From Hemiscyllium ocellatum (Eukaryota): DNA of 64,000 nt. Below, piece after piece: positions 681 through 48,900 of this stretch (its first letter is position 1; every line of letters starts with the position of its first letter). The notes beneath the pieces are model-generated. The model worked only from the letters and a program-made list of their open reading frames with translations. It searched no databases and was not told where the DNA came from. The stretch is from NCBI RefSeq assembly GCF_020745735.1, contig NC_083431.1, forward strand, positions 44,668,496 to 44,732,495, read 5' to 3'. A program made the translations under genes and the position numbers.

Positions 681-705
681 ATTGTTTCTAATAGTTGAGA
701 GAGGA

Positions 706-1110
706 GCCGGTGTTGGACAAAGTTAAAAATCACACAACACCCGGTTTTAGTCCAATAGGTTTATTTGGAAACACTAGCTTTCAGAGCGCTGCTCTTTCAT
801 CAGGTGGTTGTCGAGTATAAGATCATAAGACACAGGGTTTATAGCAAACGATTAGTGTTTACAGTAATATATTGAACAAACCTGGATTGTTAAGTCATTC
901 ATCTTTCAGAGCGCAGGTTTCAGTTGATTAATATGTAAATCTCAGAACTTCTTTTAAGTCACATTCTAGAGATAACAAGGTTTTATAACAAAAGATAACA
1001 TCTCAGCTCACACAATGTATTAAAAGTGTGAGGTCAGAGTCCGTCTGCATCCCAATCTTGAGCCTGACTCTCTCATGTTTGCCATTCATTTCAGATACCA
1101 CTGCTTGCAT
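706..1110 (-). mobile_element. Penelope-derived pseudo-LTR fragment (family B)
   Basis: Shares sequence with 28330-28690, 54040-54143 and 63945-64000; contains a hammerhead motif. Confidence 0.65.
772..806 (-). ncRNA. Minimal type-I hammerhead ribozyme motif (family B), core intact
   Basis: CAC-CUGAUGA-A-AGAGC(AGC)GCUCU-GAA-AGCU-A-GUG: stem I CAC/GUG, 5-bp stem II, palindromic AGCU helix-III loop. Confidence 0.75.
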
Positions 1111-3015
1111 TTCCAAAAAAAGTTCAAATTTGAACAGGATGCAATTAAAACCATTTTCAGGTACAAAATAAATCTGCTCATAATTTTGTAAAGTTTATGT
1201 ATTTTCAAAATATGATTGCACACTGGGGTTTGGTTTCTCAGTCTCAAAACTGCAATTGAGTATTCCTGTCTGCAGACCATTGTTATTTTTGCTAGCTTGT
1301 AAACTACACATAACTAACTGGTTAACTGAAGATATTTTGCCAAGTGAAAAATTTAAAGAAAATAGAAAATCAGGAAATAGTCTCCTCTAACTAGCCATAG
1401 TATAACCACTCTTACCTTCTACTAGCTCTGTTTACTTGCCCTCATTGGTTGAATTTTTAGTAGCTTCCTCAGTTTTATTTATTCGTGTGTTGTGGACATT
1501 ACTGGTGAGGCCAGCATTTATTGGCTTTCCCCGATAGCCAAGAGGGCAGTTAAGAGTCAACTACATTGCTATGGGTCAGCACTTACACAAAGGTCAGATC
1601 AGGTAAGACATCAGATTTCCTTCCTGAAAGAAAATTAGCAGTTGGGTTTGTATGACAAGTTGAAAATGGGTAAATGGTCACCATTAGGCTAGTTCTTTTT
1701 CCCCTCAGATTATTAGTGAGTCCAAATTTCACCGTCTGTCACAGGGAGCTTTAAATCAACCTTCTGTGAACTTTTGGCTGGGGATTGGATTACTTGGACC
1801 AGTGACATTGCCACTGCACCACCATCTTGTTCCTCTGCTTTTTCCTTTGTCTTCTCTGCCATCGCTCCATCTCATTGCCCCTTCCCTCATTTACCCACTC
1901 TTCTTCATCTCTTACTTTCCATCTCCTACATTAATTTCATTATACCTATGTTCCGACCTCTCAAACTCAAAAATTCAAGCGTTCTTGATTATGTGTAAAC
2001 ATGAAGGAGGTTTTAATATTGATAAAGCATATGTCTCAACTGCATACAATCACACTTTGAAACCCAGACAGGTGTGAAGTAGGCAGATGTGTCAGTGCAT
2101 GAGACAACTATGCCGCAGAAAGCAAAGCAATCGAATGAGTTGAATTGTATTGTTGTTGATGGTGCTTGAGGAAGTGATGCAAGTCAGATTTTTTTTGATT
2201 TAAGCACTGCGGACAAAGTCAGAATTTATTACCCATTCTTAATTGTCCTCATGAAAGTGATGATGGGTGCCTTTTTTTTAAACTCCTGCAGTTTACAATG
2301 CTATAAGGAAATGGGGGCATTCCTGGATCTTGGCTGAGTAACAGTGAAGAAATGGTGACATACTTCCAAGTCAAGATGCTGTATGGATTGGAGGGGAAAA
2401 TTGCTATGATGTTCCCATGCATTTATTGTCTTCGTCCTTCTAGGACAGCAAAGATCACAGATTGGAAAATGCTGTTGAAGGAATCTTGGTGAGTTGCTTC
2501 AGCATATTCTGTACGTGGCACACACGGCAACCACTGTGCATTGATGTTAGAGGAATTGAACATTTAGGGTGACGGATTGGGTGCTTTCCCCTGACTGGTA
2601 TTAAGCTTGAAAATATTACATCAAACCCCTGGCTTATGAACCATAGAGTGGATAAGCTTTGGGGAGTCAGGTGGTCAGTTATTCAGCGTACAATTCCCAG
2701 CTGACCAGTTCTTGTCACTGCAAAATTTTGTGAGCTCATCCAGTTTAGTTTCTGGTCTTTCGTAAACTCCAACATGTTGATGGTGCAATGCTGTTAGTAT
2801 GGCACTTAAGTGGGAAGTTTGAATGTTATCCAGGTTTTGCTGTATATGATTACAGAGTGCTTCAGCTTCTGAGGAGATGCGAATGGAATAGCAATCATGC
2901 AATGAGTGTCATTGATGGAGCAGCTGAAGATGACCAGGCCTACGGTATCATCCTGAGGAACTCTTCCAGTGTCCTGCAGCTCCCAACAATTATATCCATC
3001 TTTCTTTACACCCAA

Positions 3016-3228
3016 AAATAATACAAAAGAACTGCAGATATTGGATATCTGAAACAAAAACAGATATTGTTCGAGAAATTCAGCAGGTCTAGCATTATCT
3101 GTGGGGAGAAAACAGAGTTGACATTTTAAGTCCGTTGACTAGGAGTCACCGGAATCAAAACATTAACTGCTTTCTCCCCACAATGCTACAGACCTATTCA
3201 ATTTCTCCAGCAGTTTCTGTTTTTGCAC
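3016..3228. mobile_element. Fold-back PLE pseudo-LTR mini-element (family C, old)
   Basis: Inverted arms around a decayed hammerhead stem II/GAAA region; TSD CTTTACACCCAA (3004-3015) / CTTTATGCCCAA (3229-3240), differing by CpG decay. Confidence 0.65.
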
Positions 3229-4573
3229 CTTTATGCCCAACTTGACTTCACTCGTTAAAAATTTTATACAGATTCCCACTAACTTCAATTTTGCTTGGGC
3301 TCCTTGACATCACATTTGGTTAAATGGTGCGAGAAGATCTCCCCAGTCTTCCAACTGCAGCACAAATCTTTAATATCCATCTGAACAATCAGAACAGTAC
3401 ACCTGATGGATGGGAAAGGCACCGCCTATGAAGCATTGTAACTTCAATTTTTGCTCAGGCCCTGACGCGAGGTTCAAATTCATAACCTTATAACTTTAAC
3501 CCACTTACATTAGATCCTATCAAAACATAATAAACTTGTTTTGCTGTGCAGCAAATTGGACCACAAGACACATTCCTATCTGGTGTCGAAAGTGTTCCAG
3601 TGTTGTTCCATTTGGAATTTAATTTATTTCAGCTGCAGAAATTCTTTCAAGTCAGCACTAACTTATTAGTACATTCCTGAAGTAATAGTTTATAATAGTT
3701 GCACAGAAGAAATAATTTCAGACTTAGAACAATGCCATCTGTTATTTTATCGATACTATGTGGACATGCAGCTGCAGTAGGTTAACAGTTTCTCAGTAAC
3801 AACAGCAATGCTACAAGTGAAATGTCATCACTGCAGGCTAAACATAATTTAAGAGTCCTGAAAAAGGGTGAACATTGCAGCCAGGTTTCTTTTAAGTTGT
3901 TTTACCAGCACTTTGTCTTTACACCGGTTTTCACCACGTTAGGCAAAACTTAATAGTGCTTTGGGAATACAGTTTGAAAAAAAAACACTGTCAGCAAACC
4001 GTTATAAAAAGGAATCGGAAAATTTACATTCACAAAATTGGTGAAAAAGGGCCTTAGAGAGGAACATGAAACAGCACAGCAAATCCAATATAGGCTAACA
4101 TTCCAAGATTCTTTACAGATGGTAAAAAACTAAAATGGATTCTAAGAGCAAGCAATTGGAAGAGGTAAAAAAATGTAATTACAGAGATGGACTTTGAAAG
4201 CATTTAAAGGGGGAAAAGCAAAAATATTTAAAAAGGGAACTGTAGAGAGCAACCAAAGCTGCTAAAGGCTCTTGCTCCAATGAAGAAATAGAATATAAAT
4301 AGAAGCTGAGAATCAGAAGGGGCTTACACAGCTGGAGCAAGCTGAAGAGGAAAGGATAAAGATCACCTAGGGTACAGTCTACAGAGGATGACTGAGGATT
4401 ATAAACATAATGCAATTAAAAAAGCGCAAAGAGATCAGGTTCCTTCTCACAAATCATTAGATAAACTGCAACTAAATCCCTTCTTCCTCTAGATCACCCA
4501 TATTAGGCTCCAAGACAGAAATACAAAACAATTGCTGAGATAATAATAAAAATTAAAAACTATGGTTATTGTG

Positions 4574-10429: not shown

Positions 10430-12730
10430 CTCGCCTCTGAGCTTACCTTTTCAATCAAGACTCCTACCCACCTTCCAAGGACCCCTTTGCCCGCCTCCAA
10501 CACAGTCCATCCACCTGGACGCCCCGTGCCAGTACCTGCCCTTGACCTCTATTTCCAACTGCCACCAAGATACCAATTGCCTCAGCCTGTCTACCCCCTC
10601 CCCCACTCCAATCCCTCACCCTCATAACGTGCAACTCTCTACTCCCTCTGCTTCAACCCCAACCTCACCATCAAAGTAGAGGATGGGGGGAGGGGGGTGC
10701 AGTGGTAGTTTGGCATACTGACCTCTACACTGCTAAAGCCAGATGCCAACTCGAAGACACTCCTCCTACCAGCGCCTTGACCATGATCCCATCCCCCCAT
10801 CACCAAACCATCATCTCCCAGACCACACACAACCTCATCACCTCTGGAGATCTACCACCCACAGCTTCCAACCTCATAGTCCGGGAACCCCGCACCACCT
10901 GATTCTACCTCCTACCCAAGATCCACAAGTCTGACCACCCCAGCCAACCCATTGTCTCAGCCTGCTCCTGCCCCATTGAACTCAGCTCCACCTACTTCGA
11001 TACTGTCTGATCCCCACTGGTCCAGGAACTCCCCACATACATTTGGGACACCACCCACACCCTCCACCAACTCCAAGACTTCCGTTTCCCCGACTCCCAA
11101 CGCCTCATCTTCACCATTGATATCCAGTCCCTCTACACCTCCACCCACCATGGCCAGCCTCCAAACCCTCCATTTCTTCCTCTCCCAACGTCCCCGCCCG
11201 TACCCTGCCACTTGACACACATTTGTTTGGCTGAACTGGTCCCTCACCCTCAACAAACTTATTCTTCCAATCCTCCCACTTCCTCCAGACGATAGGGGTA
11301 GCCACGGGCACCCACATGGGCCCCAGCTATGCCTGTCTCTTTGTCGGCTACATAGAACAGTTCATCTTCCAGAGTTACACCGGCACCACTCCCCACCTCT
11401 TCTTCTACTACACTGATGACTGCATTGGCGCCACCTCATGCTCCCGTAAGGAGATTGAACAGTTCATCAACTTCACCAACACATTCCACCCTGACCTTAG
11501 GTCCCCCTGGACCATCTCTGACACCTCACCTTCTTTCCTGGGCCTCTCCATCTCCATCAATGGTAACCGACTTAACATTACAAAGCCACCAACTCCCACA
11601 GCAATCTGGATTACACCTACCCCAACCCTGCCTCCTGCAAAAATGTCATCCCCTATTCCCAATTCTTCCGTGTCCACTGAGTCTGGTCCCAGTTCCACCA
11701 CAGAACACACAAATGGCCTCCTTCTTTAAAGACCGCAATTTCCCCTCCCACGTGGTTGAATATGCCCTCCAACACATCTCATCCACATCCTGCAACTCCG
11801 CCATTGAACTCCACCCCTCCAACTGCAATAGGGACAGAACCTCCCCAATCCTCACCCTCCAACCCACCAAACTCCATATACATCGCATCATCCTCCACCA
11901 TTTTCGCCACCTACAAACAGACCCCACCACCAGATATATCTTTCCCTCCCCATCCCTATCCGCTTTCCATAAAGATTGTTCCATCCGTGATTACCTGGTT
12001 TGGTCCAAACCCCCAACAGCCCACCCTCCCCTCCTGGCACCTTCCCCTGCCACCGCCATACATGCAAAACCTACGCCCACACCTCCTCCCTAAGGGAACC
12101 TTCGACATCCAAAGCTCCACTTGCACTTCCACACGTGGCATTTACTGTATCCGTTGCTCGCGATGTGGTCTCCTCTACACTGGGGAGATTAGCCACCTCC
12201 TGGCAGAGCGCTTCAGAGAACACCTCTGGGACACCACGCCAATCAACCCCACCACCCCTGGCTGAATATTTCAACTCCCCCTCCCACTCTGCCAAAGACA
12301 CGCAGGTCCTGGGCCTCCTCCATCGTCATTCCCTCACCACCCAACATTTGGAAGAACGTCTTTGCTTCCGCCTCGGGATCCTTAAACCCCACGGCATCAG
12401 TGGATTTCACCAGTTTCCTCATTTCCCCTCCCCACACCCTACCCCAGTTCCAACCTTCCAGTTCAGCACAGTCCCCATGACCTGTCAATCTTCCTTCCCA
12501 TCCTATCACCTTCCCCACCACCTTACTGTGCTCTCAGCTACTGTCCCCCAGCCACTCCACCCCCCTCCCATTTATCTCTCCACCCCCGAGACTCCCAGCC
12601 TCATTCCTGAGGAAGGGCTTTTGCCTGAAACTTTCCTGCTCCTTGGATACTGCCTGACCTGCTATGCTTTTCCAGCACCACTCTTAATCTTGACTCTAAT
12701 CTCCAGCATCTGCAGTACCCACTTTTGCCT
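10430..12730 (+). mobile_element. Penelope-like element (Neptune-type), 5'-truncated and frameshifted
   Basis: RT motifs FYLLPKIHK, GVATGTHMGPSYACLFVG and YTDD; Cys linker GTFPCHRHTCKT; GIY-YIG IYCIRCSRCGLLYTGE...ERFREH; 3' pseudo-LTR with hammerhead remnant at ~12603-12632. Confidence 0.88.
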
Positions 12731-16019: not shown

Positions 16020-18290
16020 CTAGGAGAAAGTGGGGACTGCACATGCTGGAGATCAGAGTCGAGAGTGTGGTGCTGGAAAAGCACAGCAGGTCTGGCAGCA
16101 CCTAAGGAGCAGGAGAATGATATTTCGGGCATAAGCCCTTCATCAGGAATGAGGTTTATGGGTCGGGGCTGAGAGATAAATGGAAGGGGGTGGAGTTGGG
16201 GGGAGGTAGCTGGGAAGGCAATAGGTGGATGAGGGTCTGGAGGGCAGTGCTGGGTTGGAGGCTTGGGGCTGGGATAATGTGGGGGGAGGGGAAATGAGGA
16301 AGCTGTTGAAATCCCAGTGTGATTGCAGGGTCCCAAGGTGGAATATGAGGCATTCCTCCACCAGGCATCGGATGGTAATGGTTTGGCGGTGGAGGAGGCC
16401 CAGGACCTGCATGTCCTTGACAGAGTGGGAGGAGGAATTGAAGTATTCATCCACAGGGTGGTGGGGTTGGTGGGTGCAGGTGCCCCAGAGATGTTCTCTG
16501 AAATGATCTGCAACAAGGTGTCCTGTCTCCCGATTTAGAGGAGACTACACTGGGTGCAATAGAAGCAATAGATTACATTGGGAGAGGTGGAGGTGACTTT
16601 CTGATGGATGCGGAAGGATCCCTTAGGGCCTTGGATGGAGGTGAGGGGAGTGGTGTGGGTGCATTTTGCACTTCCTGTGGTGGCAGGGAAAGGTGCCAGA
16701 TGTGGGCTGGTGGGGTGTGTGGACCTGACAAGGGAGTCGCAGAGGGAATGGTCTTTTTCGGAAGGCTGATAGGTGTGGGGAGGGAAATATATCTCTGGTG
16801 GGATCCGTTTGAAGGTGGTGGAGGATGATGCATTGTATGTGGAGTTTGATGGGGTGGAAGGTGAGGACCAAGGGGTTCTGACCTTGTTGCGTTGGGAGGG
16901 GTGGGGGTTCAGGAGGGGTGGGGGTTCAAGGGCGGTGGTGTGTGAAGTGGAGGAGATGCGCTGGAGGACATCATCAATCACATGGGAAAGGAAGTTGCGA
17001 TCATGGGAGAAGGAGGCCATCTGGGATTTTCTGTGGTAGCAATCCTCAGAACTAGTCATCCTGGGAACAGATGCAGTGGAGGTGGAGGAATTGGGAATAA
17101 GGGATGGTGATTTTTCAGGAGGTAGGGTGGGAGGAGGTGTAGTCTAGGTAGCTGTAGGAGTCAGTGGGCTTGTAATAGATGTCTATGGTAAGATGGTCAC
17201 CAGAGACTGTGGTGGAAAGGTCCAGGAAGGGGAGGGAGGTTGCCGAGATGGTCCAGGTGAATTTGAGGTTGGGGTGGAATGTGTTGGTAAAGTTGAACTG
17301 TTCAACCTCCTCATGGGAGCAGAAGGCGGTGCTGATACAGTCATTAATATAGTGGAGGAACAGGTGGGGGGATGGTGCTGGTGTAACTGCAGAAGATGGA
17401 CTGTTCCACATATCCGACAAACAGGCAGGCACAGCTGGGTGCCATGTGGGTGCCCATGACTACCCCTTTGGTTTGGAGGAAGGTGAAGGATTGGAAGGGA
17501 AAGTTGAGGGTGAGGATCAGTTCAGTCTGGCAGATGAGGGTGTTGGTGGAAGGGTACTGGTTGGGACTGCGTTAGAGAAAGAAATGGAGGACTTGGAGAC
17601 CTTCGTCATGATGGATTGATGTGTACAGGGATTGGATGTCCATGGTGAAGATGAGGTGTTGGGGGCCAGGGAAACTAATCTTGAAGGAGGTGAAGGGCAT
17701 GGGTGGTGTAACAAATGTAGATGGGCAGTTTCTGGACTAAGGGGGACAGGACAGTGTCGAAGTAGGAGGAGATGAATTTAGTGGGACCGGCACAGGCTGA
17801 GACAATGGGCCGACCGGGGCAGTCAGGTTTGTGAATCTTAGGAAGAAGATGGAATCAGGCAGTGCAGGGCTCATGGACGATGAGGTTGGAGGCTGTGGAT
17901 CCGAGATCCCTAGAGGTGATGAGGTTGTGGATGATCTGGGAGATGATGTTTTGGTGATGGGAGGTGAGTCGTGATCAAGAGGGCAGTAGGAGGAGGTGTC
18001 TGCAAGTTAGTGTCTGGCTTCAGTGGTGTCGGGGTCTGTGAGCCACACTACTACTGCACACCCCCCCCCCCACTTTTCTGTGGGTTTGATGGTGAGATTG
18101 GGATTGGAGCAGACAGACTGGTGGGCTGAGCATTGAGGGTGAGAGGTTGGAGTGGGTGAGGTGGTTGGACAGGTTGAGGCGGTCGATGTCATGGCGGCAG
18201 TTTGAAATAAAGAGGTCAAGGACGGGTAGCAGGCCAGCACTGGGTGTCCAAGTGGAAGGGGTGTGTTGGAGGTGGGAAAAGCGTCCTCGG
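16020..18290 (-). mobile_element. Penelope-like element, same family, opposite orientation
   Basis: FLHYINDCIST...FHPNLKFTWTIS...LPFLDL...DIYYKPTDS; GTFPCHHRKCK; VIYCFYCTQCSLL; 3' pseudo-LTR containing CTGATGAAGGGCTTATGCCCGAAA. Confidence 0.88.
16115..16150 (-). ncRNA. Minimal hammerhead motif (family A) in PLE pseudo-LTR
   Basis: AUUC-CUGAUGA-A-GGGC(UUAU)GCCC-GAA-AUAU-C; the 3' strand of stem I appears disrupted by a deletion. Confidence 0.6.
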
Positions 18291-22888: not shown

Positions 22889-23317
22889 TTGCCAGGGTTG
22901 GGGGATTTGAGCTATAGGGAGAGGCTGAACAGGCTGGGGCTGTTTTCCCTGGACCATCGGAGGCTGAGGGGTGACCTTATAGAGGTTTACAAAATAATGA
23001 GAGGCATGGATCGGATAAATCTTTTCCCTGGGGTCGGGGAGTCCAGAACTAGAGGGCATAGGTTTAGGGTGAGAGGGGAAAGATATAAAAGAGACCTAAG
23101 GGGCAACTTATTCATGCAGAAGGTGGTACATGTATGGAATGAGCTGCCAGAGGAAGTGGTGGATGGCAGTACAATTGCAACATTTAAAAGGCATTTGTCT
23201 GGGCATGTGAATAGGAAGGGTTTGGAGGAATATGGGCTGAGTGCTGGCAGGTTGGGTAGGGATATTTGGTCGGCATAGACGGGTTGGACTGAAGGGTCTG
23301 TTTCTGTGCTGTACATC
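22889..23317 (+). mobile_element. CR1 3' fragment nested in the older CR1
   Basis: LSYRERLNRLGLFSL...RLRGDLIEVYKIM...WNELP followed by a 3' UTR. Confidence 0.85.
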
Positions 23318-26235
23318 TGACTGGCAGCTTAATGTTCTAGAATACAAATCCTATAGGAAGGATAGAAAAGGGGGCAAGAGAGGAGGGGGAGTGGCCTTTT
23401 TGATAAGGGATACTACTGTACTTAGGGATGATATTCTTGGAAATACATCCAAACAAGTTATTTGGGTGGAACTGAGAAATAAGAAAGGGATGATCACCTT
23501 ACTGAGATTGTATTGCAGACCCCCTAATATTCAGTGGGAAATTGAGAAACAAACTTGTAAGGAAATTTTGACTATCTGTAAGATATAGTAGGGGACTTTA
23601 ACTTTCCAAACATAGACTGAAACTACCATAGTGTTAAGTATGTACAAGAAAATGTTCTGATTCAGTATGTACCTACGAGAGAAGGTGCAAAACTTGACCT
23701 TCTTCTCTTGAGAAATAAGGCAGGGCAGGTGACTGAGGTGTTAGTGAAGGAGCACTTTGGGGCCAGCAACCATAACTCTATTCATTTTAAAATAGTGATG
23801 GAAAAGGATAGACCAGATCTAAAAGTTGAAGTTCTAAATTGGAGAAAGGCTAATTTTGATGGTATTAGGCAAGAACTTTCAAAAGCTGAATGGGGGCAGA
23901 TGTTCGCAGGTAAAGTGACGGCTGGAAAATGGGAAGTCTTCAGAAATGAGATAACGAGAGTCCAGCGAAAGTACATTCCTGTTAGGGTGAAAGGAAAGGC
24001 TGGTAGGTATAGGGAATGCTGGATGACTAAAGAAATTGAGGTTTTGGTTAAGAAAAGAATGAAACATATGTCTGGTATAGACAGCAGAGATTGACTGAAT
24101 GCTTAGTTATGAAGTAGGAGTATACTTAAGAGAAATCAGGAGGGCAGAAAGAGGACATGAGAGAATTTTGGAAAATAGGATTAAGAAGAATCCAAAGGGA
24201 TTTTATAAATACATTAAGGACAGAAGGGTAACTAGAGAGAGAAAATAAGACCCCTCAAAGATCTGCAAGGCAGAAAATGTGTGGATCTGCAGGTGATGGG
24301 GGAGATATTAAACGAGTATTTTTGCACCAGTGTTTCATGTGAAGAAGGACATGGAAGATATGGAATGTGGGGAAATAGATGGTGACATCTTGAAAAATGT
24401 CCATACTACCAAGGAGAAGGTGCTAGATGTCTTGAAACACATAAAGGTGGATAAATCCCCAGGATCTGATCAGGTGTACCCTAGAACTCTGTGGGGAAAC
24501 TGGGCAAGTGATTGCTGAAGCCCTTTTGTATCATTGATAATCACAGGTGAGGTGCTGGAAGACTGGAGGTTGGCTAACGTGGTGCCACTATTTCAGAAAG
24601 GTGGTAAGGACAAGCCAGGGAACTATAGACCAATGAACCTGATACTGGTGCTCGGCAAGTTGTTTGTGTAAATCCTGTCCCTCAGGATTTTCTCCTATTT
24701 GGAAAGGCAAGAACTGATTAGGGATAGTCAGCATGGCTTTGTGCGTGGAAAAATCATGTATCTCAAACTTGATTGAAGAAATAACAAAGAGGATTGAGTG
24801 CAGAGTGGTAGACTTGATCGATATGGACTTCAGTAAGGCATTTGACAAGGTTCCTCGTGGGAGACTAGTTAGATCTCATGGAATTCATGGAGATCTAGCC
24901 ATTTGGATACAGAACTGACCAAAGGTAGAAGTCAGGGCGGTGGTGGTGGGTTACTTTTCAGACTGGAAGCCTGTGACTCGTGGTGTGCCACTAGGATCAG
25001 TGCTGAATCCACTATTTTTCGTCACTTTATATAAATGATTTGGATGTGAATATATAAGGTATGGTTAGTAAGTTTGCAGATGACACCAAAAACGGAGGTG
25101 TAGTGAACAGCGAAGAAGATTACCTCCAAGTACAAAGGGATCTTGATCAGATGAGCAAATGGGCTGAGGAGTGGCAGATAGAATTTATTTTAGATAAATG
25201 CGAGCTGGTGCATTTTGTAATACCAAATCTTAGCAGGACTTACACACTCCTGGGGAGTGCTGCAGGTTCATAGTTCCTTGAAAGTGGAGTCGCAGATAGA
25301 TAGGATAGTGAAGAAGGCATTTGGTATGCTTTCCTTTCATTGGTCAGGGCATTGAGTATAAGAGTGGGGAGGTCATGTTGCAGCTGTACAGGACATTGGT
25401 TAGGCCACATTTGGAATATTGTGTGCGGTTTTGGTCTCCCTCCTATTGGAAAGGTATTGTGAAACTTGAAAGGGTTCAGAAAAGATTTGCAAGGATGTTA
25501 CCAGGATTGGAGGATTTGAGCTATAGGGAAGGGCTGAATATGCTGGGGTTGTTTTCCCTGGAGCGTCAGAGGCTGAGGGGTGACCTTCCAGAGGTTTATA
25601 AAAATGAGGGACATGGATAGGATAAATAAACAAGGTATTTTCTCTGGGATGAGGGAGTCCAGAACGAGAGGGCATAGGTTTAGGGTGAGAGGGGAAAGAT
25701 ATAATAGGGACCTAAAGGGCAGCTTTTCACACAATGGGTGGTGTGTGTATGGAATGAGCTGACAGAGGAAGTGGTGGAGACTGGTACAATTACTACATTT
25801 TAAAAGCAGCTGGATGGGTCAATGAATAGGAAGGGTTTAGAGGGATATAGGCCAAATACTGGCAAATGGGACTAGATTAGTTTAGGATATCTGGTCAGTA
25901 TAGACTAGTTGGACTGAAGGATCTGTTTCCACACTGTACATCTCTATGACTCTTTGGCTCTAAATAAAAATCACCAGAGACACCTGCAGGTGATAGCTCA
26001 CAACTACAAGCAGATACAGCTTTATTTTGTACTTGCTACCTGATGGGAATGTCATGTAACATTTTGGGGGTCACTCATAAGAGTGCCTGTATAAGTCTTA
26101 ATGTTGCTCATCGGTGTGTTGAATCTCTTGGGTGGGGGGGGGGGGGGAACCTCTGGTGCTGACTAAGAACAGGGATGAGATGTCACATCAGAAGGCTGAA
26201 GGACTAATTCCCCACTATCTAAGAACCCCTGGTTA

Positions 26236-26785
26236 GAATAGAATCCCCACAGTGTTGAAACAGACCATTTGGCCCAACAGGTCCACATCAACTCTCTGAA
26301 GAGCATCCCACCCAGACTCATCCCCTTACCCTATCCCTGCAACCCCTATGGCTAATCCACCTAACTTATATATTCCCGGACACTATGGGCAATATAGCAT
26401 GGCCAATCCACCTAACCTAGGAGAAAGTGATCTCCAGCATCTGCAGACCTCAGAGTCGAAAAGTGCGGCGTTGGAAAAGCACAGCAAGTCTGGCAACATT
26501 TCAGGCATAAGCCCTTCATCAGGAGTCAGGAATTTCTGATGAAGGGCTCATGCCTGAAATGTCAGCTCTCTTGCTCCCCAGCCCTTTCCAATTGCACACT
26601 TTTTGCCTCTAATCCACCTAAGCTGCACATTTTTGGACAGTGGGAAGAAACAGGAGCACTGAGGAAACCCATACAGACATGTGGAAAATGTGCAAACTCC
26701 ACACAGACAGTTGTCCAAGGCTGGAGTTGAACCCAGGTTCATGGCACTGTGAGGTAGCAGTGCTAACCACTGAACCACTATGCTG
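26236..26785 (-). mobile_element. HE1-type V-SINE interrupted by a fold-back PLE element
   Basis: Head 26611-26785, tail 26236-26418. Confidence 0.82.
26419..26610. mobile_element. Fold-back PLE mini-element (family A) with two divergent hammerhead cores, inserted in an HE1 SINE
   Basis: Minus core 26495-26522, plus core 26536-26563; TSD AATCCACCTAA(C/G)CT at 26405-26418 and 26611-26624. Confidence 0.75.
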
Positions 26786-28317
26786 TCATCCAATGACACT
26801 CCTGTTTCAGAATTGCAGCAGCTGGGATTTGTACCTCAAGCCTAGGCAGTCCTTGTCCATCATATCTACTTTTCATATATAAGAAGCCATCAGTCATATG
26901 TGATGGGCAATGGATGGAATTCTTGGTTGCATTATAGACAATTAAGTTGAGTTTGTAAAGTGTATTCTGGGATGTTTCCTGAGGATCAAGCGATAATACA
27001 TCCTGAGGATGTTACGAGTTCTTATGCATTCAGTCTTTTGAATTGATCAGAGAGCAGCTAATTCCAAGTTAGCTATCCAGCTCTTAAAACTTTTCCATAT
27101 CCGCAACACTGCCCATGAATTGATTCAGGCACTAAGGTACCTCTGCATCACCCCAGGGCAGTAATTTCTATAATATTTCTTTTCAGTGATCCAAGTTTTT
27201 TTCACAATTGTATAGAAAGATCTTCTCTTCAGAAGTGAAAACTTTGGATCTTCAATGTATTAATTGTAAGACTGTGTTATCACAATATGCCTGGACTGTT
27301 TTAATGTTCTTCATCATACCAGCACACCAGTCATTAAAAACTGCAAAATTTTCTGTGAAAGCTAGGGTGGAGCAATTCACTCTTTTGCTGTTCAATATCA
27401 ATAGATACTCCTGAATTGGCCTCCTCCAAGATGCACAATAACAGATTCAAGGCAATGTTAAAGAATATTGGAAACTAGAGGGCCCCCTGCTTAAATGCCC
27501 AATTTTTATTGGTTTTGATTTTGGTTTTCCTCCATTACAGTCATAATCAATGTGTGTTTCTAGGTCATTAATTAATTGTATGAATTTTAGGGAGACAAAT
27601 TACTAATAAGGCACTAATGAGTCTATGTCCCTCTGAGTCAAATGCCTTTACAAGGTCAACAAAAATACAAGGTACTTTCTATCCTGTTTGGCATCTTTAA
27701 CAATGTTCTCCAGTGTTGTGATGTTGTCACTACATCCTGGGGTTACCAGTGATGTTCCTCCAGTTATCAATGTTTCTCACATTCTGCTTTTTGAATCAGA
27801 CTAGCCTGAATCTTTTTTTAGTGAGTTCAGGATGGTGCTGGTTTTTAACCACAGGGCAAAGAGTTGCGGCAAACATCTGACATTCCCATTGTGAATATTC
27901 TTGAATATCCCCTAATTTCATTCCATCTGGACCAGTTGCACCCTGGGTCTATCTCCATGATGACTGAGTTGACCTCTTGTTCTCTATGGGATGCAACAAC
28001 TGGATGTCATCCCTTTGACTGGAGTATTTTGTAAATTTGTCAAGATTTCCCACTGACCAGATTGTACTTAAATTGTGCTTGAGCTCCTGCTTCGAAAGAG
28101 GACATAATGTTATGGCTGCCATCCCCATTATCTAGCGGGCTAGTCGATACCTATTATGTTTATAGAGCAACTGAGCTTTTCTGAGCTGTGCCTTTTACTT
28201 GCCCATCCTTTCCTCACACCCATATTCTTTTTGTGTCCATATCTTTTTAATCTATCTTGAGATACGTTCTATTGGCCTGGGAGTAATTTTGTGCTGTTCA
28301 CCACCAGTCACTAGAAA

Positions 28318-28995
28318 TGTTGTGGAAATGTTGGTGGTGGACAGGGTTGGACAATGTCCAAAAAAAAATCACATACCAGGTTATAGTCTGACAGGCTTAT
28401 ATGAAAACATGAGCTTTTAAAACTCTGCTCCTTCCTCAGGCGTAGTATGGGAGAGGGGAGGAATACTGACACAGAATTTATAAGCAGCAAAGGTAGCTAC
28501 CCTAAAACTGACCACCTTCTGTTGAATCTTTAATCAGTTAGAAAAGAGACACCAGTTTCTATTATTTAAAATGCAAAATCCAAATTTTTTTCAAATCACT
28601 GTCCTGAGATAATTAAAAGTTTTATCAGTGTACACAAAGCTGGTATCTCAGGTCAGACAATATATTTTAGGTGTGAGGCCATGCTTAGACTCTGTTTTAA
28701 ACTGGAAATAGTTTTTTTTAAAACAACAGATATATTCAATCTTGCTCAAAAAGTAAAACCCAGCTTGATTCCAGTACAATGTATACAGTACATTGTCCCA
28801 AGATGAAGGTTTTATTAATGACTTGAAAGAAATCTGGACTTCGCATTTTAATCAATAGAAACTGGTGTCTCTTTTCTAACTGAATAAAGATTCAATAGAG
28901 GGCAGCCAGTTTTAGGGAGCTACCATTCTGCTAATAAATTGTTGGTATTCCTTCCCCCTCTCATACTACGCCTGTTGGACTATAACCTGGTGTTA
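28318..28995. mobile_element. Large fold-back PLE pseudo-LTR element (family B) inserted in the R2 relic
   Basis: Imperfect inverted arms ~28370-28600 and ~28820-28994; TSD AGTCA(C/T)TAGAAA at 28306-28317 and 28996-29007. Confidence 0.75.
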
Positions 28996-29580
28996 AGTCA
29001 TTAGAAAGCTAATGACTGGTCCATAAGACTCAACTCCTACACTCTGACTTTGGGATCACCCTTCTTATTTAATATTTCTTCATGCTGGATTGTTTGATTG
29101 TCATCATCACAATTTTTGGGATTACAGGCCAGGTGTCAAATGATCCTTTATCATTTATTGGGTACTCCTTCTAGATACCAGCTTAGTCAAATGGACCGAT
29201 GTCCATAGCACCGTCTTCAGCCTTGTTGGGGGTTGGTGGTTGTGCTACCATGCTGATTCCCTGCAACACACTGCACTTGTCAGAAATTTGCTTGGGTGTT
29301 TTCGTGGTAAGGAAGCCGGTGACCTTTTTATTTATAAATGAGCATCCCACATATTGCTGTTCCAGTTGATAGAGAAGATGTGTTTCTCAACGAGAATATT
29401 AACTCTCATTTGGAGCATGAGAAGGCCCTGACTTGTTTGGCGGGTCCTCCATCTTTGCACTTAGCATGTGGTATTTTCTACTCTTGTCACCACATCTTAG
29501 CGACATGGGCTATTTGTCACTTGACCTTCCTCCTGCTATGCTAGGTATTTCTCCAGGATGGTAACGGCTGGGGAGTATTG

Positions 29581-29679
29581 TCAAGATTAGAGTGGTGCTG
29601 GAAATGCACATCAGGTCAGGCAGCATCCGAGGAGCAGGAAAATCGATGTTTCGGGCAGGAGCCCTTCATCAGGAGGTAT
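29581..29679 (-). mobile_element. Solo PLE pseudo-LTR with hammerhead core, inserted in a CR1 fragment
   Basis: CUGAUGAAGGGC(UCCU)GCCCGAAACAUC at 29645-29672; TSD TGGGGA(G/A)TATTG at 29569-29580 and 29680-29691. Confidence 0.72.
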
Positions 29680-29760
29680 TGGGGAATATTGCTGAAGAGA
29701 CCTTGGGGTGCAGGTTCATACTTCCTTGGAATTGGAGTCACAAGTAGACAAGGTAGTGAA

Positions 29761-30147
29761 TACAGTGAAGGTTCCACTTTGGGACCCTCCAACCACACAG
29801 CATTAATGAGGACTTCACCAGTTTCCTCATTTCCCCTACCCCCACCTTATCCCACATCCCTTTCAGCTTAGCACCGCCCTCATGACCTGTCCTACTTCTC
29901 CATCTTCCTTCCCATGTATCTGCTCCACCCTTCTCTCCGACCCATCACCATTACCCCCACCTCCATCTACCTATCACATTCTCAGCAACCTTCCCCAGCC
30001 CCACCTCCCTCCCCCTTCCATTTCTCTCCACCCACTCGGCTCACAAGCCTCATTCCTGAAGAAGGCCTCTTGCCCGAAACGTTGATTCTCCTGCTCATCG
30101 GATGCAGCCTGACCTGCTTTGCTTTTCCAGCACCACCCTCTTGACTT
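29761..30147 (+). mobile_element. 3' PLE fragment with hammerhead core, inserted in the same CR1 fragment
   Basis: CUGAAGAAGGCC(UCUU)GCCCGAAACGUU at 30056-30083; TSD GGTAGTGAA at 29752-29760 and 30148-30156. Confidence 0.75.
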
Positions 30148-32089
30148 GGTAGTGAAGGTGGTGTTTGATACTCTTGCTTTTATTGGTGAAGGCATTGAGT
30201 ATTGAAGTTGGGAGGTCATGTTCCGGCTGTACGAGATATTGGTTCGCCCTCTTTTGAAATAATGTTCAATTCTGGTAACCCTTCTACAGGAAAGATGTTG
30301 TTAACCTTGGAAGGATTCAGAGAAGATTGACAAGGATGTTGCCAGGTTTGAAGAGGTATGGGGAAGAGGCTGAATAGGCTGGTGCTATTTTCCCTGTAGC
30401 AATGGAGGCTGAAGGGTGGCCTTATAGAAGTTTATAAAATCATAAGGGATATTGATAGGGTGAATAGTCAAGGTCATTTCCCCAGCATAGGGGTGTCCAA
30501 AACTAGACACCATAGGTTTAACCCAAGAGGGGAAAAGATCTACAAGGGACTTTTCATTCAGTTCATGTATGGTATTAGTTACTACAGGAAGTGATGGAGG
30601 CTGGTACAATTATGATATATAAAAGGCATCTGGAGTCGTATATCAATAGGAAGGATTGACAACGATATGGACTAAATATTGGCAAATGGGATTAGACCCT
30701 ATAACTTGGAGCACTTTGTTGAATGTTCTTTAGCTGATGTTTTTCATCCATATGGACATGAGAAGTGCCAAATGTCAAAAAGCACAGAGTTAGTGTTCAA
30801 AATAATCCATCAGTGGTGTAGTGTATCTTAGCTTTATTAATAGCAGTTTTTTCACATGTCAGTTCAATGACTGGCTCCATGTAGGCGGTCATATTGGCTG
30901 TTTCATTGCTGAGAATATTGCCAACCCCTTCAATTGAAGTTACCCTTCCCAATTCCTTGTAAGAGAAGATGTGTGTTTTGATGGTGTTGTTAATCTCTGT
31001 TGTAGGCCGTCTAAACATATTTTACCATCATGTGTTTGGCTGTATCTACTGGAACTCCTGATCTTCATGACCTGACTCCCGGATCAGGCCTGCATAGGAA
31101 TGCACCACAGTCTTATGGGTCTCATTTCCATTTCTTCTGTCTGTGTAGAGACAGACCTCTTGCCAGCACTGAGTCTTGTTGGAACTTGTGTGGTATCAGC
31201 ATTTTTCACACCACACTACCACATTCACACCCATGGGAAGGTTATTTAAAATCAGAGATACATCCCACCAAGATGCGTGGGCTATTCAAACCCTCCATAT
31301 GCTGTGCTTTCTGAGAGTGACAACTCACACTGCTTGGTGTCCTCCTCCACATGCACACAATTGCCTCGTGATTTTTCAAGGACTCTTGGTCAGCTAGTTT
31401 CACTGCTGTTTCTGGCAATGCCAGTGGGGATGCATGACTGTCATTGTGGTAGACAAAATCACAACGAAACTACCACAGAGGTAATCGGTGAGGTGAGGCT
31501 TCCATGAGAGACCCATCCTGAAGAGTCATAGTTACTCATAGTTAATGGAGTGTCACCTAGTCCCCTAACTAAGATGTATCTTACTTGCTATATGCAATAG
31601 TGTATCTCAGTGGACAGAACTGAATCAATATTGAAAATGTATATGTGGGAGACTAGAGGTTAACATCAGGGAGGCAGGTGAAGCTTAAACAAAACTGATG
31701 TTGGAGAAACTCAGCAGAGGGAAAAAAACAGTTAACATTTTGAGTCCGAATTGAAGATAGCTGGGAAAGGGTGGCATTTGTGCTAATGGCAAGAGTAGAA
31801 AGAGTGGCCCAGTCACACAAAGAGACACCAGAAGGGGTAGGTAATCAAAGGCGATGCTGATCTTTGCTAGCTAGGTAAAGTGTTAACCCCAAAAATGTAA
31901 GTGACAGAGGATTGAACCATTCTAAAAGAACTGATATTTTAGAAACTGTGATTAGATAATCAACAGACTAATTCTCAATTCAAAATTACTTAAAATGTAA
32001 GCTTGTTGGACAGAATTCTAAAATATTAACTTTAATTACACTAAGGACAAAGTTAAATTAGAGCACAAAATTAATTTACAATATTAGCA

Positions 32090-36520: not shown

Positions 36521-36935
36521 CCTACTTCTGCATCAACTGCATGTTTGTACATACATCGGGCAGAATGCTCTCTTTCTGCATTGCAACAATACTAAGATTC
36601 CATTTTCTACCCCACCATTATTAACATCCATTCATCCTCCAGTCAGCAGCCTCCATCGGATTTGTCAATTTCAAGATCCTCATATCTATTGTTGAATCCC
36701 TCCAGGCCCCTTTTAAATCTTCCCTGTTCCTTCCATCAAAACTTGATACTCCTGTAAAATCACATCTTGAACTTCTTAGTGATAACCATCAATCCTTAGA
36801 AACTTCTGTGCACGAAAGGACTTGTTCAAAGCAGCTTCCCACAATTGCCCATAATAGCATTTGTTACAGTGGCACAGACAGAAGAACACACGAATTAGGG
36901 GTAAGAGTCAAATTTGGATTGGGAGAGGATTTGTA

Positions 36936-37138
36936 GTTGAAAATGTGTTGCTGGTTAAAGCACAGCAGGTCAGGCAGCATCCAAGGAACAGGAAATTCGA
37001 CGTTTCGGGCATATATGAAGGGCTTATGCCCGAAACATCGAATTTCCTGTTCCTTGGATGCTGCCTGACCTGCTGTGCTTTAACCAGCAACACATTTTCA
37101 GCTCTGATCTCCAGCATCTGCAGACCTCACTTTTTACC
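36936..37138. mobile_element. Young fold-back PLE mini-element (family A) in ALKBH4 intron 1
   Basis: 78-bp arms 36936-37013 and 37025-37102 with 2 mismatches; perfect 12-bp TSD AGAGGATTTGTA (36924-36935, 37139-37150). Confidence 0.9.
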
Positions 37139-45949: not shown

Positions 45950-48900
45950 AAATAGGAACAGAAGAAGGTAATGGGGCTGCTTGAGTCTTCTCCACTATTC
46001 AATAAGATCGTTACTTAACCTCCACATTCACTTTCCTATCCTACTGCCAGATCCTTTGATTCCCCGAGTCCCAGAAGTTCATTGACCTCAAACTTAATTA
46101 TGCTGAATGGCTGAGCATCCACAGCTCTCTGGGTAGAAAATTCTAAAGATTTACAATTGTTTAAGTGAAGAAGTTTCTCCTCATCTTTGTTTTAAATGGC
46201 TAACCCCACATCCTGAGTAAATATAATTAGATGACATGGAAAGAGGTCCTTTGTCCCAACTTGTCCCTGTCAACCAGGTTTCCGGAACTCGACTAGGTAC
46301 ATTTGCCTGCGTTTGGCTCCTATCCCTCTAAACCTTTTACTATTCATGTACCTATCCAAATGTCTTTTAAATGTTGTTTCTGCACCGGCATCTACCACTT
46401 CCTTTGATAGCTTATTCCATACACATACCACCGTCTCTGGAAAACGTTGCCCCTTGGGTCACTTTTATATCTTTCCTTTCACACCTTAAATCTATGCCCT
46501 CTAGTTTTGGACTCCCCCACCTTTCTGGGGAAATTCGCCTTCTCTATGCCTCTCATGATTTTATAAGCTTCTGAGGTCACCCTTCAGTTCCTACGCTCCA
46601 AGTAAAAAAAGCCCCAACTTCTCCTTTTATAATTCAAACCTTCCAGTTTTGGTAACATCCATGTAATTTTTTTTTGCACCCCTGACATTTTAATAACATA
46701 CTTCCCATAGCAGGATGAGCAGAATTGTATGAAGTATTCCAAATGTGGCATTACCAGTGTCTTGTACAACTGTAACATGATGTCCTAGCTCCTGTATTCA
46801 AGAAGGCAAACATGCCAAATGCCTCTTTCACCCTCCTGATGCCACTTTCAAGGAACTATGTACCTGCATCCCTAGGTCTCTGTTTGACGTACTCTCTAGC
46901 GCACCACCATTAACTGTGTTTGTCTTATCAAAATACAGCTCCTCAAATTTATCTGAATTAAACTCCATCTGTTATTCTTTGGCCCTGTGGCCTGGTTGAT
47001 CAAGATCCCGAGTGGACAGTGAAGAAGATTACCTCAGAGTACAGTGGAATCTTGATCCGATGGGCCAATGGACTGAGGAGCGGCAGATGGTGTTTAATGT
47101 AGATAAATGTGAGGTGCTGCATTTTGGGAAAGCAAATCTTAGCAGGACTTATACATTAATGGTAAGACCCTAGGGAGTGTTGCTGAACAAAGAGACCTTG
47201 GAGTGCAGGTTCATAGCTCCTTGAAAGGAGTCACAGGTAGATAGGATTGTGAAGAAAGCATTTGGTATGCTTTCCTTTATTAGTCAGAGTATTGAGTATA
47301 AGAATTGGGAGGTCATGTTGCGGTTGTACAGCATGTTGGTTAGACCACTTTTGGAATATTGTGTGCAATTCTGGTCTCCTTCCTATCGGAAGGATAGTTA
47401 TGAAAATGTGGATGTACCTTTTTAAGGGAATGAAGACTTGGCAAGTACACAGAGTGCTGGAGAATTTACAAAGTAACATTTGATTCAGAACAAACAGCAT
47501 TTGCTGAGTTGCTATGAGACAAAAACACAAATTTGAATTCAGCCAATCGGTTTAAATTATACCCCGAAAAATGTATCAAACTCCAACCCAATTTGAATTG
47601 AGCATATTGGCAATCTTAAAAGCCACAATCTGATGCTTTGGGGGTATAAGATGGGAAAATTGAACAGGTGAGAGGAGAACTGCCAAGTCCAGCTTGTAAG
47701 CAGACTACTTGGAAGAATAGCTCTCTTAGAAATACCTTTTTGATCAGTAACCTGTGCCACAGAAAGCTGCCTGGTTTTGAGAGAAGTGTGGTTTCGTAAA
47801 TCTTTATTGGGTGTTTATCAGACTAGTATTATAGAAGAGAAGATAAAAGGTAGGTTAGAGGAATAAAGTGTAAATAGTTAGTTAATTATTCTCTGTTATT
47901 TCTTAAAGTATGAAGTTGTTAATTTTTACTTTAAATAGTTCTTGGCCACTCAAATTTTTATAGATTTACTGCACTGGATAAATCTTGTGTTGCTGGTTTT
48001 AAATTAAGCAGGAGAGTTTACCCTATGCCGTAACAGGATGTTGTGAAACTTGAAAGGGTTCAGAAAAGACTTATAAGGATGTTGCCAGGGTTGGAGGATT
48101 TGAGCTGTCGGGAGAGGCTGAACAGACTGGGGCTGTTTTCCCTGGAGCGTCGACGGCTAAGGAGTGATTTTTATGGAGGCTTATTAAATCATGAGGAGCA
48201 TGGATAGGGTAAATAAACAATATCTTTTCTCTGGACTGGGGAGTGTGCATAGGTTTAGTGTGAGAAGTTATAAGATGTAAAAGGGACCCGGGGGCAACCT
48301 TTTCACTCGGAGGGGTGTGTGTGTATGGAATGAGCTGCCAGAGGAAGTGGTGGAGGCTGGTACAATTACCCATCCAGATGCCTTTTAAATCCTGTATCTG
48401 AACAGGAAGGGTTTAGAGGGATATGGACCAAATGCTGGCAAACGGGACTGGATTAGGTTAGCATATCTGGTCAGCATGGACAAGTTGGACCAAAGGGTCT
48501 GTTTCTGTGTTGTACTTCTCTATGACTCTATAACCTTCGTTGTTCACTATACCATCACTTTTGCTGTCATCCGCGAACTTAGGAACCATTTCTCCTACAT
48601 TCTCATTCAAATCGTTCGTATAAGTGATGAACAACAGTGGATTCAGCACTGAGGAACACTACTGATTTCCCAGTTCTGGGCTCCCTAGTTAAGAAAGATA
48701 TTTTTTCAGCATCTACTCTGTTAAGCCCCCTTTAAGAATTTTCTAAATTTAATTAGGCCTCCTCCTATTCTATTCAATCTTGGCTTTTGAATAGCCCACT
48801 CATTCCCAGGAATCAATCTAGTGAACATGTGTTACAAATCCTTTAAGGCGAATATATCCTTTCTTTGGTAAGGAGACTCAAAACTGTATTTGGTATGCCA

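What the first reader, a model, noticed from the sequence alone, without database searches (positions are those of the whole stretch)
31522..31546. 28S rRNA target sequence at the 5' end of the ectopic R2
Seen: the minus strand reads TAACTAT-GAGTAACTATGACTCT-T. The 16-mer matches 28S rRNA just upstream of the R2 site (GGGAGTAACTATGACTCTCTTAAGG), with a partial TAACTATGA duplication and no other rDNA nearby. Known: many R2 ribozymes cleave inside upstream 28S sequence, leaving a short 28S leader on the RNA. Inference: a full-length cDNA of an rDNA-resident element integrated off-target, and the junction lies near the ribozyme cleavage site.
Basis: partly seen in the sequence, partly recalled or inferred. 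Interest (0 to 1): 0.8.

Follow-up and report, generated by a model that had tools for sequence, protein, structure and literature searches.

The report
28S leader on stranded shark R2
A dead copy of the R2 jumping gene, which normally lands only in ribosomal RNA genes, lies outside them in a shark genome and still carries at its front the short piece of 28S rRNA that R2's own ribozyme leaves on its RNA. It is a tidy fossil of a known mechanism, not a new kind of element.

Summary
Minus strand 31537-31522 is an exact 16-mer of 28S rRNA, positions -23 to -8 relative to the R2 nick. It is unique in the window, and no other rDNA is present.

The 28S match continues through TCAGG (31521-31517) to the canonical -1 junction, with a 2-nt deletion and one substitution. 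The leader is therefore 21 nt, not 16.

Downstream lies a decayed vertebrate-type R2, collinear with a 4.3-kb R2 from Chiloscyllium punctatum (tblastx E 4e-54). It is riddled with nested CR1, SINE and MITE-like inserts, and its last ~1 kb was not found.

I fetched nine other non-rDNA R2 copies from C. punctatum.
- Their leaders start at 28S -28 in five independent insertions, and at -24 and -22 in two more. None extends past -28.
- Their conserved HDV-like ribozyme core has a P1' strand (majority CCCGCC) complementary to 28S -28..-23.

New here: the upstream flanks of eight independent ectopic copies resemble 28S in register (combined p 5e-8). This points to off-target hits by R2's own machinery at pseudo-targets.

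The TAACTAT(GA) repeat is real, with a 10-nt period, but its origin is unresolved.

The scan has already found the same kind of fossil elsewhere in this genome (s1-146958, s1-233841).

The parts
31545..31572 (-). Upstream genomic flank, a 28S-like pseudo-target. GGGAcTAggTgacACTCcaT aligns in register with 28S -26..-6.
   Evidence: 12/21 matches in register, p 0.013. With TAACTAT included, 15/28, p 0.011. There is no repeat homology to the rest of the window or to L001-L004.
31536..31544 (-). TAACTATGA. This is either a partial upstream copy of the leader (28S -20..-12; the last two bases are shared with the leader) or the distal end of the pseudo-target.
   Evidence: Sequence. TRF period 10, 1.9 copies. 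Chance of such an abutting repeat is 0.0013.
31522..31537 (-). Exact 16-mer of 28S rRNA, positions -23..-8: the core of the RNA-borne leader.
31517..31521 (-). TCAGG, the rest of the leader: 28S -5..-1 after loss of CT, with A>C at -4.
   Evidence: Collinear with L004 ...CTCTTAAGG|GCTGACTCTC in alignments A1.
31297..31516 (-). R2 5' UTR. It opens with a second, degenerate 28S-like stretch (GGTCTCTCATGG, 31513-31502).
   Evidence: Alignment to C. punctatum copies.
31380..31438 (-). Decayed HDV-like ribozyme core: P2 GTCAT (31438-31434), P3 GCA (31433-31431), L3 TCCCCACT (31430-31423), P3' GGC (31422-31420), P1' ATTGCC (31419-31414; family majority CCCGCC), AG (31413-31412), then a shortened P4 and J4/2.
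   Evidence: Local alignment to the family core and the 9-copy alignment. There is no Rfam hit, as expected with a ~100-nt J1/2.
30719..31006 (-). Remnant of the R2 N-terminal region, including the first zinc finger (ZnF3 position).
   Evidence: tblastn with C. punctatum proteins P0021 and P0022; tblastx.
29567..30696 (.). Later insertions inside the R2: a CR1 3' fragment (+ strand, 30150-30696) and a MITE-like element with inverted ends (29580-30145).
   Evidence: Self-BLAST and the repeat finder.
29249..29488 (-). R2 Myb domain remnant (…INKKVTGFLTTKTPKQISDK…).
   Evidence: PDB search: R2Tg ORF 9dou_A and 9nl3_A 'R2 retrotransposon protein', E 6e-4, the only hits; tblastn.
28437..28974 (.). 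MITE-like insertion inside the R2, with 84% complementary arms.
26796..28236 (-). R2 spacer/NTE, reverse transcriptase and thumb remnants, with many stops and frameshifts.
   Evidence: tblastx with the L004 R2, summed E 4e-54, collinear; tblastn with P0002-P0010; PDB 9nl2_A residues 599-633 and 731-789.
26233..26788 (-). tRNA-derived SINE inserted into the R2 thumb region. It is flanked by a ~16-bp target duplication (CAGGAGTGTCATTGGAT / CAGGGGTTCTTAGAT) and is itself interrupted at 26419-26610.
26080..26216 (-). Last recognisable R2 sequence (about R2 positions 3223-3263), before the tail of a + strand CR1 (23320-25953).
   Evidence: Local alignment score 37 against a shuffle mean of 25.3, sd 2.9; CR1 mapped.

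Best explanation
This is the 5' junction of an old, dead, non-rDNA copy of a vertebrate (three-zinc-finger, A-lineage type) R2 retrotransposon on the minus strand.

Inferred sequence of events:
1. An R2 master copy was co-transcribed with 28S rRNA.
2. Its HDV-like ribozyme, whose P1 helix uses 28S -28..-23 (GGCGGG), cut the co-transcript 28 nt upstream of the insertion site. The R2 RNA therefore carried a 28-nt 28S leader.
3. R2 protein then nicked a genomic site whose upstream half resembles the 28S target (GGGAcTA...ACTC...TTAA) and reverse-transcribed the RNA to, or almost to, its 5' end.
4. The leader's complement could not anneal to this imperfect pseudo-target as it does in rDNA. The cDNA end was joined by end-joining instead.
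5. The junction kept the leader from -23 to -1, so 5 nt were lost. It also kept a 7-9-nt TAACTAT(GA) repeat, which is either a templated slip or the end of the pseudo-target.

What is shown directly: the 28S identity, the R2 body, the -28 start in relatives, the ribozyme complementarity, and the 28S-like flanks.

What is inferred: that the source copy lay in rDNA, that R2's own protein did the insertion, and how the 5' end was joined.
For: - The 16-mer is exact and unique in the window.
- The leader continues to -1 and is followed by homologous R2 5' UTR.
- The R2 body is collinear with a 4.3-kb C. punctatum R2, tblastx E 4e-54, with the same distance from the leader to the ORF.
- The Myb and thumb pieces hit only solved R2 proteins in the PDB.
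- Seven independent C. punctatum insertions on large non-rDNA contigs start at 28S -28 (five copies), -24 or -22. Their flanks are unrelated, none runs past -28, and none has a 28S 3' flank.
- The ribozyme core is conserved in nine copies: P3 GCC/GGC, L3 UCCCUGCU, P1' CCCGCC complementary to 28S -28..-23, P1.1 GG, P2 GUCGU/ACGAC, and a 9-bp P4 with one compensatory change.
- Cleavage at -28 is the commonest R2 ribozyme site, and leaders are known to persist as tandem 28S duplications when no heteroduplex forms (PMC3774820).
- Upstream flanks of eight independent ectopic copies are 28S-like in register: Fisher p 5e-8, and exact GGAGTA in 3 of 8 flanks, P 8e-5. Downstream flanks are not 28S-like. 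This fits A-clade R2 proteins reading the upstream half of the target.
- Junction-spanning 31-mers are held by runs of two other coded species, 4 of 6 sampled words, which suggests an old insertion.
Against: - The window copy's 3' third and its 3' junction are missing. Target nicking by R2's own endonuclease cannot be checked for this copy.
- The window ribozyme is too decayed to fold convincingly on its own: MFE z -0.9 and no Rfam hit.
- No rDNA-resident copy of this family was retrieved, so the true 28S/R2 boundary and the in vivo cleavage site are inferred, not measured.
- The leader start at -23 and the extra TAACTAT are not explained by a single simple step.
- The read-laying test was lost to a filter error.
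Confidence: 0.8

Rival explanations
1. The immediate source was not an rDNA copy. Cleavage at -28 leaves the P1 strand on the RNA, so every daughter copy carries a complete ribozyme. An ectopic copy transcribed by read-through could therefore give rise to further leader-bearing ectopic copies. On this view the shark lineage is partly emancipated from rDNA.
For: There are many ectopic copies: at least 9 in C. punctatum, several more noted by the scan in this genome, and hits in two other shark assemblies. The L005/L008/L009 subfamily shares an inherited second leader copy.
Against: Leader substitutions are private to each copy rather than shared, e.g. GGTGGG, GGCAGG, GACGGG. That fits independent descent from a clean 28S-flanked master. 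All copies seen are decayed. Slowly evolving, very large shark genomes would retain rare off-target events for a long time.
Confidence: 0.12
2. The 28S-like 16-mer belongs to the genomic target (a 28S-mimicking site) and was not carried in by the RNA.
For: The flanks of ectopic copies are 28S-like. CR1 tails in this genome end in CTATGACTCT, a 10-mer shared with 28S.
Against: The match is 16/16 exact, whereas the pseudo-target flanks match only 50-65%. The same leader, in the same position relative to the R2 5' UTR, precedes nine other copies with unrelated flanks. The window flank is not a CR1 tail.
Confidence: 0.04
3. A piece of rDNA carrying an R2 insertion was moved here as DNA, i.e. a dispersed rDNA pseudogene.
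For: Another scan note (s1-147023) reports an R2 with a 28S 3' flank elsewhere in this genome. I did not check it.
Against: 28S homology ends at -23 here and at -28 in every relative. There is no 28S sequence upstream or anywhere else in the window.
Confidence: 0.02
4. R2 RNA was copied here by another LINE's machinery (CR1/L2), for instance by template switching, rather than by R2 protein.
For: The window copy lacks its 3' end and sits beside CR1 and SINE sequence.
Against: The SINE next to the R2 is a simple later insertion with its own target duplication, and R2 sequence resumes after it. The adjacent CR1 is in the opposite orientation. Relatives end precisely at ...CAAAATA(G) with no foreign tail. 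The 28S-like flanks argue for R2's own DNA-binding domains.
Confidence: 0.04

Closest known systems
[quoted passage not shown]
   Same: A ribozyme-derived 28S leader is retained on the cDNA and joined without heteroduplex formation. The result is target-like sequence followed by the leader. Partial repeats such as CTATGACTAACTATGACTCTC are listed in that paper.
   Different: Here the upstream 'target' is not 28S but a non-rDNA site that only resembles it. The host is a shark. The leader has lost its first 5 nt.
HDV-like R2 ribozymes cleaving at 28S -28 (e.g. Tribolium R2-A, Bombyx; predicted for avian A-clade R2; PMC3774820, PMC11331408)
   Same: P1 is formed by GGCGGG of 28S at -28..-23, and the J1/2 is long. 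By my recollection of the HDV genomic ribozyme, the P3/L3/P1.1 core resembles it (L3 UCCUCGCU in HDV against UCCCUGCU here).
   Different: Activity is inferred from sequence and from fossil 5' ends only. The window copy's core carries substitutions in P1', P2 and P3 and a shortened P4.
Vertebrate A-clade R2 (R2Tg zebra finch, R2Pm turtle; PDB 9dou, 9nl2-9nl4)
   Same: The Myb motif TTKTxKQISDK and the thumb GGLG region are shared. The N-terminal domains read the upstream half of the target, matching the upstream-only similarity of the pseudo-targets.
   Different: Protein pieces are only 35-50% identical. This copy is non-functional and outside rDNA.
Non-target-specific R2 families R2NS-1_SMed and R2NS-1_CSi (Kojima et al. 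2016, PMC5035012)
   Same: R2-clade elements found outside 28S genes.
   Different: Those families have lost specificity and have young copies. The shark copies keep a 28S leader and sit at 28S-like sites, which points to occasional off-target events by a 28S-specific element.

Membership tests
R2 non-LTR retrotransposon | R2-type reverse transcriptase and thumb | tested here: met
   tblastx with a 4.3-kb C. punctatum R2 is collinear, E 4e-54. The PDB hits are to R2 proteins only. The reading frame is broken many times.
R2 non-LTR retrotransposon | N-terminal zinc finger(s) and Myb DNA-binding domain | tested here: met
   Myb piece against R2Tg and 9nl3, E 6e-4. The ZnF3 region is matched by P0021 and P0022. 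ZnF2 and ZnF1 are largely lost to nested insertions.
R2 non-LTR retrotransposon | C-terminal CCHC motif and restriction-like endonuclease | tested here: not met
   Not found in the window by motif scan, tblastn or tblastx. Relatives have it (P0010 ...KPDLIF...VVDVTV...). This copy is truncated or disrupted by a CR1 nest, so it is missing from this copy, not from the family.
R2 non-LTR retrotransposon | Insertion at the 28S rDNA site TTAAGG|TAGCC | tested here: not met
   There is no rDNA in the window and the flank is unique non-rDNA. This copy is ectopic. The leader shows that its RNA came from a 28S context or from a leader-bearing copy.
R2 non-LTR retrotransposon | 5' HDV-like self-cleaving ribozyme | tested here: inconclusive
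   The family-level core is clear, with P1' complementary to 28S -28..-23. The window copy aligns to it but is decayed. There is no Rfam hit and no significant fold.
Ribozyme-derived 28S leader (upstream-cleaving R2) | The element's 5' end begins with 28S sequence that starts at the predicted cleavage site and ends at the R2 site | tested here: met
   The window leader runs from -23 to -1. Five independent relatives start exactly at -28 and none starts further upstream.
Dispersed rDNA pseudogene | 28S sequence extending beyond the ribozyme cleavage site and/or downstream of the element | tested here: not met

The most novel reading that the evidence does not exclude
The many leader-tagged R2 fossils in bamboo-shark genomes may form a natural off-target map of an A-lineage R2. 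On this reading, insertions recur at pseudo-sites defined by GGAGTA at -24..-19 plus a CTCTC/TTAA-like stretch. Because the 28-nt leader supplies the ribozyme's P1 strand, each ectopic copy is a self-contained processing unit. The lineage may therefore have been able to propagate, at least transiently, outside rDNA.
Probability: 0.2. Interest if true: 0.6.

Novelty: new member of a known kind. Interest (0 to 1): 0.4.

Why it matters
The fossil acts as a natural 5' RACE. Together with its relatives it indicates that a chondrichthyan R2 ribozyme cuts at 28S -28 in vivo. It also shows that the leader is kept when the upstream target cannot pair with it, as the Eickbush model predicts.

The set of pseudo-targets shows which target positions R2 tolerates changing: GGAGTA at -24..-19 and the CTCTC tract are kept, while the downstream half is free. 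That is relevant to people who engineer A-clade R2 proteins for site-specific gene insertion and worry about off-target sites.

For genome annotation, it flags a class of R2 relics that ORF-based tracks miss.

Tried and rejected
- Pfam scans of 20 stop-free pieces found nothing useful; the pieces are too short and decayed.
- The first PDB search, with the GPDG piece, found nothing.
- Rfam at gathering score and in E-value mode found no ribozyme or rRNA in the window. A plain MFE fold of the 5' region was not better than shuffles.
- A brute-force search for P1 partners gave too many 6/7 candidates to be informative. My first guess of P1' (UACCUCU at 31483) was dropped once relatives showed the real core further downstream.
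- My first guess of a zinc finger at ~31190-31100 was also wrong. Relatives place ZnF3 at ~30800-30720.
No read-level evidence was obtained.
- An R2-SINE template-switch chimera was considered and rejected. The SINE has its own target duplication and R2 sequence resumes after it.
- A stricter local-alignment test of flank similarity to 28S was only marginal. The register-aware test was decisive.
- Searches for the RLE domain or the R2 3' end in the window failed.
- Three look-ups returned no DNA, for the great white shark and catshark assemblies.
- No element-length consensus was built. Only a short majority ribozyme core was used as an alignment probe.

Full report
**Observation**

On the minus strand the window reads ...GGGGACTAGGTGACACTCCAT TAACTAT GAGTAACTATGACTCT TCAGG ATGGGTCTCTC....

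The R2 target strand of 28S rDNA, as printed in two R2 biochemistry papers, is CAAGCGCGGGTAAACGGCGGGAGTAACTATGACTCTCTTAAGG|TAGCCAAATGCC.... GAGTAACTATGACTCT at 31537-31522 is therefore an exact copy of 28S positions -23 to -8 relative to the first-strand nick.
- It is the only such match in the window even with two mismatches allowed; 0.03 are expected by chance.
- The best alignments of the 84-nt target anywhere else in the window are at chance level.
- The downstream half of the target is absent.
- Rfam finds no rRNA.

The TAACTATGA repeat is real. TRF reports a 10-nt period, 1.9 copies and 100% matches at 31526-31544. A leader-internal repeat of 7 nt or more abutting the leader occurs at about 0.13% of random positions.

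**The element behind the junction**

No long ORF survives, but the R2 identity is secure.
- The Myb piece at 29386-29186 hits only R2 proteins in the PDB (R2Tg ORF 9dou_A and 9nl3_A), E 6e-4, sharing TTKTxKQISDK.
- The thumb piece at 27011-26781 hits 9nl2_A 'R2 retrotransposon protein', residues 731-789.
- A motif-C piece hits residues 599-633 of the same chain.

A whole-library HMMER search with the thumb piece returned R2 fragments. Their contigs could be fetched, and a further protein search named the source as Chiloscyllium punctatum.

tblastx of the 4.3-kb R2 in locus L004 against the window gives 15 hits, collinear from R2 position 559 to 3077, on window 30964 to 26799 of the minus strand, with summed E 4e-54.

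The window copy is interrupted by:
- a CR1 fragment (30150-30696);
- two MITE-like elements (29567-30146 and 28437-28974);
- a SINE (26233-26788) with its own ~16-bp target duplication.

R2 sequence resumes after the SINE to about 26080. It then meets the tail of an oppositely oriented CR1 at 23320-25953. The last ~1 kb of the element (CCHC, RLE, 3' UTR) was not found. The 3' junction of this copy therefore cannot be examined.

**Where the element starts**

R2 position 559 in L004, counted from 28S -28, corresponds to a point 578 nt from the -28-equivalent position in the window. There is neither missing nor extra 5' sequence.

The alignment of the 5' regions shows that the 28S match continues past the 16-mer. 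L004 reads GGCGGGAGTAACTATGACGCTCTTAAGG|GCTGACTCTC.... The window reads GAGTAACTATGACTCT--TCAGG|ATGGGTCTCTC.... The leader therefore runs to the canonical -1 position, with a CT deletion and one A>C change. R2 proper begins at 31516.

**Leader length and the ribozyme**

I retrieved nine non-rDNA R2 copies from C. punctatum (L001-L009), all on large contigs among ordinary genes. L004 and L006 are duplicates of one event: their flanks are 80-85% identical, the same as their R2s.

The leader begins as follows:

| Copy | Leader start |
|---|---|
| L004/L006 | -28 |
| L001 | -28 |
| L002 | -28 |
| L007 | -28 |
| L009 | -28 |
| L008 | -24 |
| L005 | -22 |
| window | -23 |

L003 is 5'-truncated and has no leader. 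The flanks are unrelated to each other, and none of the copies continues into 28S beyond -28. No copy has a 28S 3' flank; they end at ...GTGTTCCAAAATA(G).

All copies share an HDV-like core: P2 GUCGU, P3 GCC, L3 UCCCUGCU, P3' GGC, P1' CCCGCC (column majority), P1.1 GG, a 9-bp P4 with one compensatory C-G to U-A change in L006, J4/2 GACCAA, and P2' ACGAC. P1' is complementary to GGCGGG, i.e. 28S -28..-23, which places cleavage at -28. That is the commonest site among R2 ribozymes (PMC3774820) and the one predicted for an avian A-clade R2 (PMC11331408).

The window's core lies at 31438-31380 and is decayed: GCA/TCCCCACT/GGC/ATTGCC/AG. This explains why single-sequence folding and Rfam see nothing.

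The window copy is 5 nt short of the -28 end.

**Why it landed here**

I aligned the upstream flanks of the eight independent ectopic copies to 28S without gaps, allowing the flank end to fall between -12 and +6. They are 28S-like in register:

| Copy | Matches | p |
|---|---|---|
| L009 | 14/21 | 0.001 |
| L004 | 12/19 | 0.003 |
| L002 | 15/27 | 0.006 |
| window | 15/28 | 0.011 |
| L001 | 14/26 | 0.015 |

The three remaining flanks (L007, L005, L008) were individually weaker, with p 0.09-0.15. Fisher's combined p over all eight is 5e-8. Exact GGAGTA at the -24..-19 register occurs in 3 of 8 flanks, P 8e-5.

The window flank reads GGGAcTAggTgacACTCcaTTAA. Without the TAACTAT it still matches 12/21, p 0.013.

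At least two of the flanks are demonstrably pre-existing repeats, so the similarity is genomic and not leader-derived:
- a CR1 ORF2 segment in L004, with an uninterrupted paralogue in L003;
- a SINE in L007.

Downstream flanks show no 28S similarity. [quoted passage not shown] The most economical mechanism is an off-target event by R2's own protein at a pseudo-target. End-joining of the cDNA followed, because the leader could not pair with the imperfect upstream DNA. This is the off-target analogue of the 'tandem 28S duplication' junctions described in rDNA.

**The TAACTAT(GA) repeat**

Two readings remain.

(a) It is a templated partial re-copy of leader positions -20..-14, made by polymerase slippage or template re-alignment during 5' junction formation. 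Such partial repeats are documented at R2 junctions. L005 shows a shorter analogue, TAAC|AGTAAC.

(b) It is the distal end of the pseudo-target, whose TTAA lies in register with 28S TTAAGG.

I favour (a), at roughly 60:40. An empty orthologous site would settle the question.

This lineage is prone to leader duplications. The L005/L008/L009 subfamily carries an inherited second leader copy directly after the first, as in the Eickbush model of 5' extension.

**Age and distribution**

The window copy is about 30% diverged at the DNA level from the C. punctatum copies; only one 136-bp blastn hit, at 73%, was found. Four of six sampled junction 31-mers are present in runs of two other coded species from several studies, which suggests the insertion predates their split. 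This could not be verified by laying reads.

R2 is known in Chondrichthyes (PMC5035012, PMC13188248). In the passages I read, I found no description of leader-tagged ectopic copies there.

**Relation to earlier scan notes**

The scan has already reported the same kind of fossil elsewhere in this genome.
- s1-146958 describes an R2 head with a 28S leader given as 25 bases.
- s1-233841 describes an R2 at a 28S-mimicking site.
- s1-147057 and s1-148248 describe this same element and its ribozyme.

My data agree in kind. They add the -28 boundary, the family ribozyme core and the statistical support for pseudo-targets.

**Verdict**

The feature is real and correctly interpreted, and it fits known R2 biology. 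It is a new member of a known kind. Its modest added value is as a natural record of the RNA 5' end and of the off-target preferences of an A-lineage R2.

Noticed in passing
window 26233-26788 (minus strand), with an inner insert at 26419-26610: A tRNA-derived SINE is inserted in the R2 thumb region, with a ~16-bp target duplication. It is itself split by a ~190-bp MITE-like element. Its 3' tail resembles the local CR1 tail, suggesting that CR1 mobilises it.
   Followed up: partly
window 25877-25960, 48453-48530 and 23252-23318: CR1 3' tails in this genome end ...CTGTACATCTCTATGACTCT. The 10-mer CTATGACTCT is shared with 28S -17..-8, which could make CR1 tails weak R2 pseudo-targets.
   Followed up: partly
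L004:7315-13874 and L006:6205-12607: Two C. punctatum loci carry the same R2-in-CR1-ORF2 insertion. Flanks and R2 are equally diverged (about 80-85%). This looks like a duplicated composite, not two independent hits.
   Followed up: partly
L005:7127-7200, L008:6778-6850, L009:6814-6885: An R2 subfamily has a fixed second, tandem copy of the 28S leader (GGxGGGAGTAAyTCTGAC) right after the first. This is a textbook case of 5' extension by leader duplication.
   Followed up: partly
window 10793-11578 and 17185-17964: There are long inverted repeats (several arms of 110-290 nt, 75-81% complementary) about 6-7 kb apart, with strongly opposite GC skew (-0.42 and +0.50). This may be a large element with inverted ends or a palindromic duplication.
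   Followed up: no
window 36935-37103: A near-perfect hairpin (79-nt arms, 97% complementary, 11-nt loop) belongs to the same MITE-like family that is nested in the R2 at 29580-30145.
   Followed up: no
L001-L009, R2 3' ends: Eight of the nine C. punctatum R2 copies (the L005 match stops short of the 3' end) end at ...GTGTTCCAAAATA, followed in several by G or AG. It is unclear whether a few bases of downstream 28S (TAG...) travel on the RNA.
   Followed up: no
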